Shown here one piece after another: positions 10,523-36,861 of a stretch of DNA of 64,000 bases. The DNA is from Ophelia neglecta (taxonomy: Eukaryota): the NCBI GenBank assembly GCA_965285935.1, contig OZ260664.1, positions 12,276,001 to 12,340,000 of the forward strand, given 5' to 3'. Position 1 is the first letter of the stretch. Each line of letters opens with the position of its first letter. The notes under the pieces are model-generated. The model saw nothing but the letters and a program-made list of their open reading frames with translations. It was not told the DNA's origin and made no database searches. A program made the position numbers and the translations under genes.

Positions 10523-10593
10523 GGATGAGACGTATATATGACTGCGGCTATGAAATAGTTCAGTAGTTCGCACGACTCTTGAATAGGTCATGC
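10523..10593 (+). promoter_or_regulatory. SECIS-like hairpin (orphan copy, head of unit 1)
   Basis: ATGA (10538-41), 11 nt, AAA, 18 nt, GA (10574-75). Helix TGCGGCTATG / CAGTAGTTCGCA. Confidence 0.6.
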
Positions 10594-11790
10594 TTAATAC
10601 TAGTGGTTGATGCTTCATCTTGGTGACTGCAAACTTATGTAATTATTTAACCTGCTTTAACGGCGACTCACACACGCAAGTAAAGGCGGCGTTTCATTGG
10701 GTGATATTGCAGCAAATCAGCATACCGGAAAGGTACCCACATATATGGACTGCGGCCTTTCCAATTCGTAGTTCACTGTCGTCCGTGAAGTGGCGCCAGT
10801 AATATTAGTAAACCACCGTATTACTGCTACTGTCGGAGTAGTACGCTACATTAATGGTTGTTACTCATTTTAATTGATGCTATAGGTGTACTACTAAATA
10901 TAGTTCATTCCTATAACATGTTAATGGAGTACTACTTGCTATGCTTAAGAGCCACCTCTGGTGGCCAAAGTCCTCACTCTTAAGTGATGTTATAAAAAGA
11001 ACTATATTTGGCAATCCTCTATCAGACGTAACACAAACAGTTGTGGGTCGGTAGTGAAGTGCAGAGCCGTCCCGTATGATTTGAGTTTATCGGATCTATG
11101 TTTGGTTTTTATGATATTACATGAACCTAGAGAAGGTAGGCAATATTAATTTGATCTCTTAATATCTGCTATGGAAAGTAAGTATGTTTAAGAGTGACAA
11201 CAAGCATGTTGTAATGTGTACTTACGATTGTTTTTTTAGTACCGCTTTTACCTGATTTAAGCATATTACCTCTTATAGTAGCAGTCTTGTTTCCATAGTA
11301 AACAAAATCACGCATTTTGACCATCGTCCTATTGGATGCATTTGTGTGCTATACCAAAAATCATCTCCAAAATGTAGTTATATGAGCTTTAAATATAGTT
11401 GAACCTGAAAATTAAAAATTTATCTGTACCATGATAAAATTGATATTTGGAATTGGGGTTTTTCACGACACATAAGCAACATGTTGGCCTTTTAGAATGC
11501 TTGTGGTTAGATACATAGGTGTATTAACAGTATTATATTTGATCTTGTATTATGCTTTATTGCAAAGAAAAACAATCCGCTACACTTATGGACACATAGC
11601 GGGATAGGGTTTATTATCCGTTATTCTCGCGTTGAATTGTGGGAGTAATGGTATTGATGTCATTGCAGAATAAAACTTATATTAGAGTGTTGATTTTAGC
11701 ACCCGTTCTCGTAATTACAACAGTTATACCTAACTAATAGATAAAATACAAAAAGAAACTCCCAGTAATCGGCATAATGTGAGCAAAGAT

Positions 11791-11911
11791 CTCCGGCTAA
11801 TACCGCAGCTTATCGGCCTCATTCGGACACATGTATATTTCAATTAAAGCTCCGGCTAATACCGCAGCTTATCGGCCTCATTCGGACACATGTATATTTC
11901 AATTAAAGCTC
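11791..11911 (+). repeat. 59-bp direct tandem duplication unique to unit 1
   Basis: CTCCGGCTAATACCGCAGC...TTTCAATTAAAG occurs at 11791 and again at 11850; single copy in units 2-4. Confidence 0.9.
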
Positions 11912-13166
11912 TTTGTATAATTTCCCTTATAAAAGACATGAAAATGATGTTAAGACAGTTTCGGCCGCAAGCAATGCGTTGTGCTACCACCAATTTAAAA
12001 TACAGCTCCCATGAATAATAGGTAAATACATTAATTTTGATTTGATCGTTAAAATGATTATGTGTCCAGCAGATTAATTCAATACCTATTACATAAGTTT
12101 GCATGTATAAGTCTATTAGGTCCCCTGGCTGAAAGGACCCCCAAAAGAAACCCTATGATAACAAGACTCCGGGGACGTAATCAACCAGTGTTGGCGATCG
12201 GGGACAAAAAACCCAGTTTTTTAAACCGGATCCCTGAGTCAAATTGAAAATCCATTTGCAGAATCTGTTGCATATGTATATAATATTACTCTTTTCCTAT
12301 CTATTATTCTAAACTTCTCATGTAACCTCATCGCTGACCCTGGTACAGGTAGGGAAGAAATACTCTCTTCAAAAACACAAGTTTCCCATGCCAAATTTTC
12401 TACGTTGGTTCGTAGGTAATTGTGAGATATTCTGCGTACAACGTTCATAAATGCATTTACCCACATAAAACGGTGAATAATCTCATCTAGGTCAAGAAGA
12501 TTGTGCACTTATCATTGACAGATCACTGTTTGATAACTGTTTTAGAACAATGGTATCATACGATGTGCTTAGGAATTTGGTCTATGTTTAGACAAGAATA
12601 CTTCAGACCCAGCGGTGGTTGATAGTGCACAACATTTATCAAGTTGAATCGAGTGTTTACATCATATAATAATCAACGTTTGAGTAGTGTTTTAGTAGTG
12701 CGTTTTGGTCTTAATTTTTTTTATTGGCTATATATATGCAAAGTTATCTAATGGCCGCTTGAATGTTCGTTTTTCCTCATGCTGCTTATCGAGTGGCCCT
12801 TCAAAGTCCGTGCCCCTTGAAGGTTATCTAGCCATCTTAAAAGGTGTACACTTATAAATCCGACAGAATATCATTAATTTGAGACTGTTACAGGAATTCA
12901 TTACAATTAGACCATCCGGTGTCTATAGTTTTATCCATATTGCTATTTATGTTGCCTTAATGCATGCACACCAGCCAATATGTAATTGAATGATCAAATG
13001 TTCATATATTGTCTCTTTCCGGAAGCTATTACAATGATCACAACTACCTTTAAATATTAATGAAAGTAAACATTAAAAGGTAGGTATTATAGCCAGGGCT
13101 TCATTCTGTTCCTTAACATATGGGTTTTCAATGAGCAGCCTATTGCATAGCAGGGCACAAGTGGCC

Positions 13167-13191
13167 TGACCTGGGGATCCGGGATAGGTCA
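13167..13191. promoter_or_regulatory. Everted pair of perfect nuclear-receptor half-sites (TGACCT-N13-AGGTCA), candidate hormone response element
   Basis: Seen directly about 870 bp upstream of the ATG; also at 20509-20533, 28070-28094 and 34246-34270. Function is inferred only. Confidence 0.3.
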
Positions 13192-14051
13192 GAGGGAAGA
13201 TTTATGGCTGTGTGTTGTATGTATAGACAAGTACTTTTAAATAAATGTACTCATGATTCCAAGATTATCATCTGCCAATCGAGAAGCCTGGCAGTTAACC
13301 AGTTAACTACGAAAAGAAATAGTGCCTGCATTATGGTTCACACTAATTTACTGCATAAGGTATAATAAATATAATCAAGAAACTATCTTAAATTTTCACT
13401 ATTCTTCAATATTGTAAACAGTAAAACTTCTTGGTTACAACATATATGCCATATGCTATGTCTTATAGAGTTTGATAACGGACCGATGCGCATGTGTTAT
13501 ATATGAGATGCTTTACTGCATCTATGCTTGTGTCCTACGATTGCCTTAAAATCTAACAATTACTAGTATTATAATGCAACATAATGCTAATAGTTTAACA
13601 TTTGTTTCATGGATTATGAGAGGTAGGTTATTACAAACCCATCAGTCGGTACGTCTGAGACGGTAAATCGTGGCCCGGGAGGATATTATCATAAAAGCAC
13701 TACTTATTAAATTATTCCTAGTTAATGATTATGGATTCTTCGTCGGTTATCCATTCCCTTTTCATTCAACAGCGTGGCCCTCTTTTCACTGTTCTTTTCC
13801 AGCAAGCAGCAGCAACCACACCAAAAGCCAGCGCCACAGCGGCCCTTAAGTAATTACCACTATCGACCAGTCAAGCGTCTTGCAGGACAGCTATGCTCTG
13901 TGATAATTTCAACTTCTGTTGCGTTGATTTTACTGTTATGCGAGATATTTATAGCATTTTTATCTGGCTTTGTTTATTCACTGTATCAAATTGAGTCCAT
14001 AATGTACCTCTTATTGTACCTTATAGTGTCGGCACTGGAAGAATTTGCATC

Positions 14052-34800: not shown

Positions 34801-35099
34801 TAGCTAATGATTGTGGATTCATCGTCGGTTATCCATTCCCTTTTCATTCAACAGCGTGGCCCTCTTTTCACTGTTCTTTTCCAAAAGCCAGCGCCACGGC
34901 GGCCCTTAAGTAATTACCACTATCGACCAGTCAAGCTTCATGCAGGACAGCTATGCTCTGTGATAATTTCAACTTCTGTTGCGTTGATTCTACTGCTGTG
35001 CGAGATATTTATAGCATTTTTATCTGGCTTTGTTTATTCACTGTCCATAATGTACCTCTTATTGTACCTTATAGTGTCGTCACTGGAAGAATTTGCATC

Positions 35100-35925
35100 A
35101 TGGCGGGTACTACGTTTAATCGTAGTATGAAGAAACCAACAAGGCAGCGCGTTCGGATGACGATTATTCACGTCTTTTATGTGGTTTGGTCGGTCCTTTT
35201 GCAGTATGTATATAAATATCTAATTCCAAGAAAATACAGTGTGGCGATCTTCCAATCCCTACTAAATCGCATGCATACACGCGCCCAAGAGTCTCACCGT
35301 AGAGGCATATGTGGAAAGTATAACTGTTCGAATGCTTTTAAGTAAGATAAAGAATGGTATCCTTGAGGGTATGCATGGTGGGATGCTGGGAGTCGGCGAC
35401 TATGTGCCCAACTCAGCAATGGTGCGATTGAATCCTGACGGAGGTTATAGCGCATGCACTCTGTCAGATTTCCTACAAACAGGCCGCCCTCTGGTGATTA
35501 CATTTGGCAGCTGTACCTGACCTCCGTTCATCAATACCATACAGGAATTTGCGCGTCTTGTCAAGGAATATGGCGACGTTTGTGACTTTCTGGTGGTCTA
35601 TATTCGGGAAGCTCATGGTATAGGAGAATGGTTCTTCCGGGGCAACAAGTACCAGATAAAGGAAGCTGACACTTTAGAAGATCGAGTAGCGGCAGCTAAC
35701 AATTTACGAAATGAGATTGGGGATATTTGCCCAATTACAGCCGATTAGTTGGATAACGATATGTCTTTGTGGTACAAGGCCTCTCCTGAGAAACTGTGTG
35801 TAGTAGAAGATGGTCGAGTACGCTATATTGGGGGCCCGGGACCTCACGGTTACAGCATAGCGGAGGTCGACGCCTGGCTCAAACAGCACATAAACAGGGA
35901 AAACGTTAAAACTCGATCATGTTAA
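35100..35925 (+). pseudogene. Deiodinase copy 4 (type B), pseudogene
   Basis: A 4-bp duplication GCATGCAT (35269-35276) shifts the frame. The Sec TGA is retained at 35518-20. TTG>TAG nonsense change at 35746-48. Confidence 0.9.
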
Positions 35926-36431
35926 AACCAAATTTATCAAAAATAAATTCAAAATAAATTGTCTTACTTGTTAACAACCATGTCTTGAATATCTAGCTAC
36001 GGCCTCTAATTTTTTGGGATGATCCTTTACAGATTCAGGCACAATTCTTAAAAGGTTTATCCTTAATACTAGCGATTGATAGTTAGTGTGGATTGTACTT
36101 TAGCAAATCTACCCCTCTATTTAAGGTCAACGTAAGTAACTATATTAGTGGTTGGCATTTATGTTACAAAATGTACCCAAATTAGTGTGCTGTGTTTATT
36201 GGGGTTTGCTGCATGGATTAGAGATCGATGCAATTGCCGTCTGCATTGAAGTAGTGAGGAAAGAGGCACCAACTGTACCAGCATATACAGGCTATGAATT
36301 AAACGATATTGTGTATTCATGTGTTATTTCTACAAACAGTGGAATATATATTATATATATTATATAGAAGAGCTCCTCCGTCCATTAATTAAGTGTTCTC
36401 CTGAGATGTGGTTGTCCGTACTAGACATTTT

Positions 36432-36502
36432 GGATGAGACGTATATATGACTGCGGCTATGAAATAGTTCAGTAGTTCGCACGAATCTTGAATAGGTCCA
36501 GC
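36432..36502 (+). promoter_or_regulatory. SECIS-like hairpin 1 downstream of copy 4
   Basis: ATGA 36447-50, AAA, GA 36483-84. Confidence 0.6.
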
Positions 36503-36791
36503 TTAATACTAGTGGTTGATGCTTCATCTTGGTGACTGCAAACTTATGTAATAATTTGAATGCACAATATTTTATGATCAAATATCAAACATCTAACGGA
36601 CGTCTTTGATATATTCATGTCTGCAAATAATCTTTCTAAAACTGAAATACGGCAGAAACTAGTGTTTTCCTACATGCTTTAAACATTTATATCATTTTTC
36701 CCCTCCAAGGTCACAATTACATTATATCCAAAAAAGATTCATCCATTATTATTGTGCTCTCCTGGGGTGTTGTTTCCGTACTAGACATTTT

Positions 36792-36861
36792 GGATGAGAC
36801 TATACATGACAGCGGCTATAAAATAAATCAGTAGCCCGCACGAATCTTAACCAGTTCATCT
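36792..36861 (+). promoter_or_regulatory. Degenerate SECIS-like hairpin 2 downstream of copy 4
   Basis: ATGA 36806-09, GA 36842-43. The 5' arm reads AGCGGCTATA instead of TGCGGCTATG, breaking both terminal pairs of the helix. Confidence 0.5.

What the first reader, a model, noticed from the sequence alone, without database searches (positions are those of the whole stretch)
10523..36861. Eleven SECIS-like hairpins: single-Sec genes with tandem dual SECIS elements
Seen: the motif ATGAC-TGCGGCTATG-AAA-loop-CAGTAG(TT/CC)CGCA-CGA occurs 11 times (ATGA at 10538, 15403, 15762, 18067, 22706, 23065, 25493, 29552, 31783, 36447, 36806). It fits the eukaryotic SECIS consensus: UGAN/NGAN kink-turn quartet, about 10-bp helix, AAA 11 nt after ATGA. 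Variation between the two UTR versions falls in the loop or strengthens the stem (G.U to G-C), as expected if structure is selected. Each intact gene has two copies about 360 nt apart. Established: multiple SECIS elements are typical of multi-Sec SELENOP and unusual for single-Sec mRNAs. Inference: SECIS duplication may tune Sec-insertion efficiency or rank in the selenium hierarchy.
Basis: partly seen in the sequence, partly recalled or inferred. Interest (0 to 1): 0.8.

Follow-up and report, generated by a model that had tools for sequence, protein, structure and literature searches.

The report
Duplicated SECIS hairpins in deiodinase array
The eleven hairpins are real and are best read as selenocysteine-insertion (SECIS) elements and decaying copies of them, in a four-unit tandem array of deiodinase genes; two SECIS behind a one-selenocysteine gene is rare but has been reported before, including for an amphioxus deiodinase.

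Summary
Observation confirmed. The 18-nt motif occurs 11 times, all on the + strand. All 10 exact copies in the 762-Mb genome lie in this window.

The copies sit in four tandem units of about 6.4-7.3 kb (9980-37398). Each unit holds a single-exon iodothyronine-deiodinase gene with one active-site TGA and a TAA stop.

The hairpins fall into three classes:
- B1: about 530 nt after the stop.
- B2: 359 nt further on.
- A: a 340-bp fragment of the 3'UTR, 3.5 kb upstream of each gene, with no coding sequence of its own.

Only two genes are intact, so only four hairpins serve live genes. Three hairpins follow pseudogenes and four are orphans.

Evidence for SECIS identity:
- The hairpins fit the motif geometry.
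- They are the only candidates downstream of the Sec codon.
- They match the single SECIS of a paralog 1.1 Mb away, as a conserved island with a compensatory pair change.
- They vary less than the flanking UTR.
- Every pair-breaking change lies in an orphan or pseudogene-linked copy.

Evidence against: Rfam SECIS_1 does not score them, and no RNA data could be found.

Two SECIS downstream of a clustered deiodinase was already described in amphioxus (PMC3473315). This is a new member of a known kind. The idea that the pair tunes Sec insertion is untested.

The parts
9980..37398 (+). Tandem array of four units (about 6.4, 7.3, 6.5 and 7.2 kb). Each unit runs: short repeat, LINE RT fragment (absent from unit 1), orphan A hairpin, about 3.4 kb, deiodinase gene, B1, B2.
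   Evidence: Self-BLAST and repeat families
14052..14873 (+). Deiodinase copy 1, intact. Sec codon TGA at 14466-14468 in FGSCT-U-PPF; stop TAA at 14871-14873.
   Evidence: Translation; PF00837 E=2e-8 and 9.5e-35 for the two pieces
21363..22184 (+). Deiodinase copy 2, intact. TGA at 21777-21779.
   Evidence: tblastn. Against copy 1, dN/dS is 0.23 for the C-terminal half and 1.3 for the N-terminal half, with dS 0.07
28600..29004 (+). Deiodinase copy 3, a pseudogene. The N-terminal half and the Sec codon are deleted (equivalent of 13697-14467).
   Evidence: the deletion joint is also seen in an independent DNA contig
35100..35925 (+). Deiodinase copy 4, a pseudogene. It has a 4-bp insertion at 35269-35272 (frameshift) and an in-frame TAG at 35746.
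15370..15470 (+). B1 SECIS hairpin of intact copy 1 (AUGA at 15403)
   Evidence: R1 122 bits; constrained SECIS fold -21.3 kcal/mol, and the unconstrained MFE is the same hairpin
15730..15827 (+). B2 SECIS hairpin of intact copy 1 (AUGA at 15762)
   Evidence: fold z-score -2.3
22673..22773 (+). B1 SECIS hairpin of intact copy 2 (AUGA at 22706)
23033..23130 (+). B2 SECIS hairpin of intact copy 2 (AUGA at 23065)
29520..29619 (+). B2 hairpin behind pseudogene copy 3 (AUGA at 29552). B1 is deleted in this unit, and one helix I pair is broken here.
36414..36514 (+). B1 hairpin behind pseudogene copy 4 (AUGA at 36447). Three substitutions break helix I.
36774..36873 (+). B2 hairpin behind pseudogene copy 4 (AUGA at 36806). 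The first helix II pair next to the core is broken (U>A), and there is a G>A change beside the AAA.
10505..10605 (+). Orphan A hairpin (AUGA at 10538). It lies in a 340-bp copy of the B1 part of the 3'UTR (10306-10648, 91.5% identical to 15171-15513) with no coding sequence upstream. Its 3' core is CGAC and one helix I pair is G.G.
18034..18134 (+). Orphan A hairpin (AUGA at 18067)
25460..25560 (+). Orphan A hairpin (AUGA at 25493)
31750..31850 (+). Orphan A hairpin (AUGA at 31783)
15899..15904 (+). Candidate poly(A) signal ATTAAA about 70 nt after B2. It is conserved in all four units (also 23202, 29691, 36936). The equivalent site after B1 reads ATCTAA.
   Evidence: the paralog L007 has AATAAA about 70 nt after its single SECIS
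16730..17620 (+). Non-LTR retrotransposon RT fragment between B2 and the next A hairpin (also 24034-25047 and 30515-31336)
   Evidence: PF00078 weak hit; raised read depth

Best explanation
The hairpins are SECIS elements, and decaying copies of them, belonging to a tandemly amplified family of single-exon deiodinase selenoprotein genes. The ancestral gene had one SECIS about 70 nt before its poly(A) signal, as its paralog 1.1 Mb away still has. A local duplication of about 240 bp of 3'UTR, now spaced 359 nt apart, produced B1 and B2. The upstream duplicate lacks the poly(A) hexamer, so transcripts probably run through B1 to the site after B2 and carry both elements (inferred). A further 340-bp copy of the B1 segment landed 3.5 kb upstream of the gene (class A). 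The whole unit was then amplified to four copies. In the two intact genes both hairpins keep every base pair. I infer that each is competent to recruit SBP2 and recode the single UGA, which makes them redundant. The orphan and pseudogene-linked copies are eroding. The dual arrangement is most simply a by-product of unequal recombination in a gene cluster, not a purpose-built device.
For: 1. Each unit has a PF00837 deiodinase with TGA at the catalytic FGSCT-U-PPF position and a TAA stop. Sixteen of the 17 deiodinase loci in the genome have exactly one TGA; the one exception is truncated copy 3 of this array, which has lost the Sec codon. A tRNA-Sec is present at 77.9 bits.
2. The motif geometry fits: AUGA, 11 nt, AAA, about 10 bp of helix II, GA, and a long helix I. 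For B1, B2 and the paralog, the unconstrained minimum-free-energy fold is this same hairpin.
3. A SECISearch-style scanner finds only these hairpins in the 27.6-kb array on either strand. Background is 2 hits in 72.8 kb. The same scanner finds one candidate, usually 130-430 nt after the stop, in most other deiodinase paralogs.
4. The paralog L007 has one hairpin homologous to both B1 (73%) and B2 (67%). It is the main block of its 3'UTR that aligns; the only other match is a 54-nt stretch I take as spurious. It shows a C-G to A-U compensatory change, and 96.7% of cells pair against 30-53% in the slid controls.
5. B1 against B2: the hairpin is 9.5% diverged and the flanks 21.5% (p=0.02). Between the two intact units the hairpins differ at 1.6% and the rest of the UTR at 5.1% (p=0.035). 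Against pseudogene unit 4 the figures are 4.7% and 2.9%.
6. All pair-breaking changes among the window copies lie in A, B2 of unit 3, B1 of unit 4 and B2 of unit 4. Constrained fold energies are -19.7 to -21.7 kcal/mol for the copies behind intact genes and -14.5 to -17.1, or failure, for the others.
7. The ATTAAA after B2 is conserved in all units, and the matching site after B1 is not a poly(A) hexamer.
8. Precedent exists: two SECIS behind Bf.DI_b in an amphioxus DI cluster, attributed to nonreciprocal recombination (PMC3473315).
Against: - Rfam SECIS_1 gives no hit at all for these hairpins, even on a 94-nt slice at E<=10.
- A home-made model from nine other paralog SECIS scores them at only 3-4 bits.
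- The base 5' of the 3' GA is C, not the consensus K (G or U).
- The apical loop is short (6-8 nt), and helix II has two 3'-side bulges.
- No RNA data exist here: the runs found are DNA. Inclusion of both hairpins in the mRNA is therefore inferred from hexamers alone. AATAAA at 14890 and 14901 and ATTAAA at 15255 lie upstream of B1.
- The conservation statistics rest on few substitutions (p about 0.02-0.035), and gene conversion among the units blurs lineages.
- No cross-species orthologs could be found.
Confidence: 0.75

Rival explanations
1. Only one of the two hairpins works. The other is a tolerated relic, as reported for the upstream SECIS of human Sep15 and as suggested for Ciona SelW1.
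For: Literature precedent (PMC2874816). One UGA needs only one SECIS. B2 in units 1 and 2 has a 2-nt shorter apical loop, while B1 has a weaker helix II with a G.U pair. Other deiodinase paralogs manage with one element.
Against: Both hairpins keep all 24 pairs in both intact genes. Both are more conserved than the flanking UTR, even though B1 and B2 have diverged about 17% overall. The orphan A copies show how quickly an unconstrained copy picks up core and helix I lesions.
Confidence: 0.3
2. The dual SECIS is adaptive. Two elements raise Sec-insertion efficiency or the gene's rank in the selenium hierarchy, or alternative polyadenylation switches between one-SECIS and two-SECIS mRNAs.
For: Both copies have been retained and are constrained. 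The poly(A) hexamer is lost after B1. SELENOP shows that SECIS elements can have distinct roles (PMC5133445).
Against: There are no expression or functional data. Redundant retention over a modest divergence (dS 0.07 between units, about 17% between B1 and B2) does not require an advantage. The same region also spawned a useless third copy (A), which points to sloppy duplication. Published parallel cases were judged to be by-products.
Confidence: 0.12
3. The hairpins are not SECIS elements. They are a locus-specific conserved 3'UTR hairpin or repeat with another role or none, and the true SECIS lies elsewhere or the genes are dead.
For: Failure against Rfam SECIS_1 and the home-made model R2. 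A non-consensus C sits in the core. There is no RNA evidence.
Against: Rfam scores even the best paralog SECIS below its own threshold (28.1 and 23.4 bits against 35) and misses the rest, so the test is insensitive in this genome. R2 also misses the L007 element. No other SECIS candidate exists in the array. The C-terminal domain is under purifying selection and the TGA is kept. CGA cores also occur in the candidate SECIS of paralogs L004a, L004b, L005 and L007.
Confidence: 0.08

Closest known systems
Two SECIS elements downstream of Bf.DI_b in the Branchiostoma floridae deiodinase cluster (Jiang et al. 2012, PMC3473315)
   Same: A single-Sec deiodinase gene inside a tandem DI cluster of an invertebrate, with two strong SECIS predictions downstream. 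The authors attribute this to the SECIS-bearing DNA being copied more often than the rest during nonreciprocal recombination.
   Different: This is a different genome, judged from its size and chromosome lengths, and so an independent event. Here the duplicate was itself amplified with the unit. There is also a third orphan copy per unit, plus evidence of constraint on both elements and decay in the pseudogene units.
Other single-Sec genes with two predicted SECIS: Ciona SelW1 and human Sep15 (PMC2874816), Nematostella Nv.Gpx_a (PMC3473315)
   Same: One UGA with two SECIS-like hairpins in the 3' region.
   Different: They belong to other protein families. The upstream Sep15 element is reported as non-functional, whereas here both copies look intact in the live genes.
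SELENOP mRNAs with two SECIS
   Same: Two SECIS elements in one 3'UTR, with a poly(A) site after the second.
   Different: SELENOP has many UGA codons and two dissimilar SECIS with distinct roles (PMC5133445). Here there is one UGA and two recent duplicates that are 90% identical across the hairpin.
Rfam RF00031 SECIS_1 / canonical eukaryotic SECIS (UGAN/KGAW core, AAR, type I or II; PMC3753652)
   Same: AUGA and GA core, an unpaired AAA 11 nt from the core, helix I and helix II, and a type I layout.
   Different: The K position is C, the apical loop is short, helix II is bulged on the 3' side, and there is no score against RF00031.

Membership tests
Eukaryotic SECIS element | Lies downstream of an in-frame UGA at a known Sec position, on the same strand | tested here: met
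   B1 and B2 lie 937 and 1296 nt after the TGA of FGSCT-U-PPF in copies 1 and 2. This is not met for the four A copies, which have no coding sequence upstream.
Eukaryotic SECIS element | Kink-turn core UGAN / KGAW with tandem G.A pairs, preceded by A | tested here: inconclusive
   B1, B2 and L007 have AUGAC on the 5' side and CGAA on the 3' side. GA and W are present, but the K position is C. The A copies have CGAC, so W is lost as well. The consensus is taken from PMC3753652.
Eukaryotic SECIS element | Helix II of about 9-12 bp, with unpaired AAR about 10-12 nt from the core, plus helix I | tested here: met
   There are 11 nt from AUGA to AAA, 9-10 pairs with 1-2 bulges, and a long helix I. 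96.7% of cells pair, against 30-53% in the slid controls.
Eukaryotic SECIS element | Scores against a curated SECIS covariance model | tested here: not met
   Rfam SECIS_1 gives no hit at the gathering threshold or at E<=10 on 26.6 kb, 521 nt or 94 nt. The model gives only 28.1 and 23.4 bits (gathering threshold 35) for two paralog SECIS and nothing for the others. SECISearch3 is not available here.
Eukaryotic SECIS element | Present in the mature mRNA 3'UTR | not testable with these tools
   No RNA runs were found, and the three runs that were found are DNA contigs. Only hexamer positions are available.
Eukaryotic SECIS element | Binds SBP2 and supports UGA-to-Sec recoding | not testable with these tools
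   This needs a reporter or binding assay.
Iodothyronine deiodinase selenoprotein (PF00837) | T4_deiodinase domain with Sec (TGA) in the active-site motif | tested here: met
   The pieces on either side of the TGA hit profile positions 27-113 and 115-235 of 237 (E=2e-8 and 9.5e-35). The genome-wide six-frame hit scores 171 bits with 1 TGA.
SELENOP-type multi-SECIS mRNA | Multiple in-frame UGA codons served by two SECIS | tested here: not met
   There is one TGA per gene and the stop codon is TAA.

The most novel reading that the evidence does not exclude
Both SECIS elements of the intact deiodinase genes are functional and kept by selection. One UGA would then be served by two near-identical SECIS in a single mRNA. 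The same array would also supply graded natural mutants: the orphan A copies with a core and a helix I lesion, and the unit-4 copies with helix I or first-pair lesions. This would be a ready-made allelic series for asking whether SECIS number sets Sec-insertion efficiency.
Probability: 0.3. Interest if true: 0.5.

Novelty: new member of a known kind. Interest (0 to 1): 0.3.

Why it matters
The locus shows how SECIS elements are born, kept and lost. A 3'UTR segment is duplicated, both copies stay intact behind live genes, and copies without a live gene erode at exactly the positions the SECIS model calls critical. If both elements prove active, the locus is a natural test of whether SECIS dosage affects decoding of a single UGA. 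It is also a practical warning: Rfam SECIS_1 misses the compact type I SECIS of this genome's expanded deiodinase family, so annotation pipelines will call these genes truncated.

Tried and rejected
- **Rfam scans:** I ran cmscan at the gathering threshold and at E<=10 on four nested slices. There was no SECIS_1 hit.
- **Independent SECIS model R2:** I built it from nine other paralog candidates, whose helix II covaries well in the alignment. It lacks power. The window's top hits are noise at E about 1, our hairpins score 3-4 bits, and it misses L007 too. I count this as inconclusive, not as evidence against.
- **Protein word searches:** Queries with the C-terminal and N-terminal pieces found no relatives. 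Exact-product look-ups found no contigs. No cross-species test was therefore possible. These blanks say nothing about longer or shorter relatives. I did not run the large representative search, because the protein family is not in doubt.
- **RNA evidence:** The look-up of sequencing runs returned three runs of one sample. When laid, they cover genes and intergenic DNA alike, so they are genomic DNA. They confirm the sequence and the unit-3 deletion joint but say nothing about transcripts.
- **Dispersed repeat, MITE or SINE:** Rejected. Only 13 copies exist genome-wide, all at deiodinase loci.
- **A second Sec codon to explain a second SECIS:** Rejected. The stop is TAA and there is no further in-frame TGA.
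- **A copies as remnants of a LINE-disrupted deiodinase or a retrocopy:** No deiodinase coding remnant lies upstream and no A-tail follows the homology end. Their origin is left as a plain segmental copy.
- **Housekeeping:** The window contains no N runs.

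
Full report
**1. Observation**

Ten copies are exact and the copy at 36806 has two mismatches; 0.07 matches are expected by chance. The window is C7:12276001-12340000 of a 762-Mb eukaryotic assembly. All ten exact copies in that genome lie in this window. A covariance model of the full 100-nt hairpin (R1) finds 13 places genome-wide. These are the 11 here, one at C7:11139688-11139791, and a near-identical twin on the small contig C17. 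Only 150 of the first-look candidates were scored. The motif is therefore locus-specific and not a dispersed repeat.

**2. What the locus is**

Self-comparison shows four tandem units between about 9980 and 37398. Each unit carries a single-exon gene whose two halves hit Pfam T4_deiodinase (PF00837). The halves join across an in-frame TGA in FGSCT-U-PPF, the catalytic Sec position. The stop codon is TAA, so there is one Sec per protein.

The four copies differ in state:
- Copy 1 (14052-14873) and copy 2 (21363-22184) are intact.
- Copy 3 has lost the N-terminal half and the Sec codon through a 772-bp deletion. An independent DNA contig shows the same joint.
- Copy 4 has a 4-bp insertion and an in-frame TAG.

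Between copies 1 and 2 the C-terminal half has dN/dS 0.23 and the N-terminal half 1.3, with dS 0.07. The genome has 17 deiodinase loci. Sixteen have exactly one TGA; the exception is truncated copy 3 of this array. The genome also has a tRNA-Sec at 77.9 bits. It is a Sec-using animal with an expanded deiodinase family, as described for several invertebrates (PMC3473315).

**3. Three classes of hairpin**

- **B1** (15403, 22706, 36447) lies about 530 nt after the stop.
- **B2** (15762, 23065, 29552, 36806) lies 359 nt further on. The B1 and B2 segments are a duplication of about 240 bp at 83% identity (15337-15574 against 15698-15926).
- **A** (10538, 18067, 25493, 31783) lies in a 340-bp copy of the B1 part of the UTR (91.5% identity). 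It sits about 3.5 kb upstream of each gene and has no deiodinase coding remnant before it. In units 2-4 a LINE RT fragment precedes it.

Only four of the eleven hairpins therefore follow intact genes.

**4. Are they SECIS elements?**

Evidence for:

- The geometry fits. It runs AUGA, 11 nt, AAA, nine to ten helix II pairs, GA, then a long helix I. For B1, B2 and the paralog, the unconstrained minimum-free-energy fold is this same hairpin.
- My SECISearch-style scanner finds only these hairpins in the 27.6-kb array, and none on the opposite strand. Outside the array it finds two hits of comparable energy in 72.8 kb.
- The same scanner finds one candidate, usually 130-430 nt after the stop, in most other deiodinase paralogs. 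A compact type I SECIS soon after the stop is thus the family norm, and one element per gene is usual.
- The paralog L007 is 72% identical in its coding sequence. It has one hairpin homologous to both B1 (73%) and B2 (67%). This hairpin is the main block of its 3'UTR that aligns; the only other match is a 54-nt stretch I take as spurious.
- On the model-fitted alignment, 96.7% of cells pair, against 30-53% when partners are slid. One pair changes on both sides (C-G to A-U) and several change on one side only. By eye, a second pair is G-C to U-G once the gap is shifted.

Evidence against:

- Rfam SECIS_1 gives no hit at any threshold or slice size. The same model scores two clear paralog SECIS at only 28.1 and 23.4 bits, below its 35-bit cut-off. 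It misses the others altogether. The test is formally failed, but it is weak in this genome.
- A model I built from nine other paralog candidates (R2) had no discriminating power.
- The core reads UGAC/CGAA. The position 5' of the 3' GA is C, where the published consensus has G or U. The candidate SECIS of paralogs L004a, L004b, L005 and L007 have the same CGA.

**5. Signs of constraint**

- Between B1 and B2 the hairpin differs at 9.5% and the duplicated flanks at 21.5% (p=0.02).
- Between the two intact units the hairpins differ at 1.6% and the rest of the 3'UTR at 5.1% (p=0.035). Between intact unit 2 and pseudogene unit 4 the figures are 4.7% and 2.9%.
- Every pair-breaking substitution among the window copies lies in an A copy, in B2 of unit 3, or in B1 or B2 of unit 4. 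The four hairpins behind intact genes keep all 24 modelled pairs.
- The A copies have also changed the base after the 3' GA. Their SECIS fold is no longer the minimum-energy fold.
- Constrained fold energies are -19.7 to -21.7 kcal/mol behind intact genes. They are -14.5 to -17.1 elsewhere, and 36806 fails the scanner.

The counts are small. Gene conversion has also made the units mosaic: the coding sequence of copy 4 differs from copy 2 at only three places, while their UTRs differ at about 3%. I treat this section as supportive, not conclusive.

**6. Are both in the mRNA?**

This could not be shown. No RNA run was found. The three runs that hold the sequence cover genes and spacers evenly, so they are genomic DNA.

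From the sequence alone, an ATTAAA lies about 70 nt after B2 in all four units. The paralog has AATAAA about 70 nt after its single SECIS. The site after B1 that matches the ATTAAA reads ATCTAA. This suggests read-through of B1 to a site after B2. However, AATAAA at 14890 and 14901 and ATTAAA at 15255 lie upstream of B1 and cannot be excluded as poly(A) signals.

**7. Mechanism proposed**

- **Shown:** tandem amplification of a deiodinase unit; a local 3'UTR duplication that predates the amplification; and an extra orphan copy per unit.
- **Inferred:** both B1 and B2 are in the transcript, and each can recruit SBP2 to recode the one UGA. They would then be redundant and retained so far, while copies without a live gene decay.

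The simplest origin is unequal recombination that copied the SECIS-bearing segment more often than the rest.

**8. Comparison with what is known**

Jiang et al. 2012 reported two strong SECIS downstream of Bf.DI_b in an amphioxus tandem deiodinase cluster. They called Nv.Gpx_a another rare case and proposed exactly this origin (PMC3473315). Ciona SelW1 and human Sep15 are further single-Sec genes with two predicted SECIS, and the upstream Sep15 element is reported as inactive (PMC2874816). SELENOP differs in having many UGAs and two dissimilar SECIS with separate roles (PMC5133445).

The present locus is therefore a new member of a known kind. What it adds is internal evidence that both copies are constrained, plus a set of decaying copies.

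**9. Verdict**

- The SECIS reading is likely, at about 0.75-0.8, despite the Rfam failure.
- The dual-SECIS claim is correct for the two live genes.
- The claim of novelty is overstated.
- Interest is modest.

Noticed in passing
window 16730-17620, 24034-25047, 30515-31336: A 3' fragment of a non-LTR retrotransposon reverse transcriptase sits inside units 2-4 of the array and is absent from the first unit (9980-10348 joins straight to the A segment). Read depth there is 5-10 times that of the neighbouring sequence, so the element is high-copy in the genome.
   Followed up: partly
window 10084-10294, 12262-12471, 16494-16711 and the matching places in later units: A short repeat of about 210 bp (88-91% identity) occurs twice per unit. 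Its nature (SINE, MITE or LINE part) was not determined.
   Followed up: no
window 14052-14465 against 21363-21776: The N-terminal half of the two intact deiodinases has dN/dS 1.3, against 0.23 for the catalytic half. Copy 1 has arginines in the presumed membrane anchor. This echoes an earlier first-reader note on this window.
   Followed up: partly
window 35269-35272 and 35746: The coding sequence of copy 4 differs from copy 2 at only three places, and two of them are disabling (a 4-bp insertion and a TTG>TAG change). Its 3'UTR differs from that of copy 2 at about 3%. This points to recent gene conversion of the coding part, or very recent inactivation. The two changes were not checked against reads.
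   Followed up: partly
L008 (G000:C17:239500-243600) against L007 (G000:C7:11136700-11140800): The deiodinase locus on the 825-kb contig C17 is almost identical to the one at C7:11.14 Mb, SECIS included. It is probably an unplaced haplotig or a very recent duplicate.
   Followed up: no
L006:3047-3119 (-) and L004:5046-5121 (+): Two deiodinase paralogs have SECIS candidates with UUGA in place of AUGA. Their tandem neighbours (L009, L004a) keep AUGA. These are possibly weakened or dead elements.
   Followed up: no
G000:C2:9288000-9600000: More than 40 evenly spaced sub-threshold hits to the tRNA-Sec model (43.6 bits) form a large tandem array. They are probably long-variable-arm tRNAs (Ser or Leu type). 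The true tRNA-Sec is at C9:47360617-47360702 (77.9 bits).
   Followed up: no
window 43894-45006 (+) and 59525-60082 (-): The neighbouring genes are a single-exon galactosyltransferase (PF01762, E=1.4e-37) and an exon of an endonuclease/exonuclease/phosphatase-family protein (PF03372, just under the cut-off).
   Followed up: no
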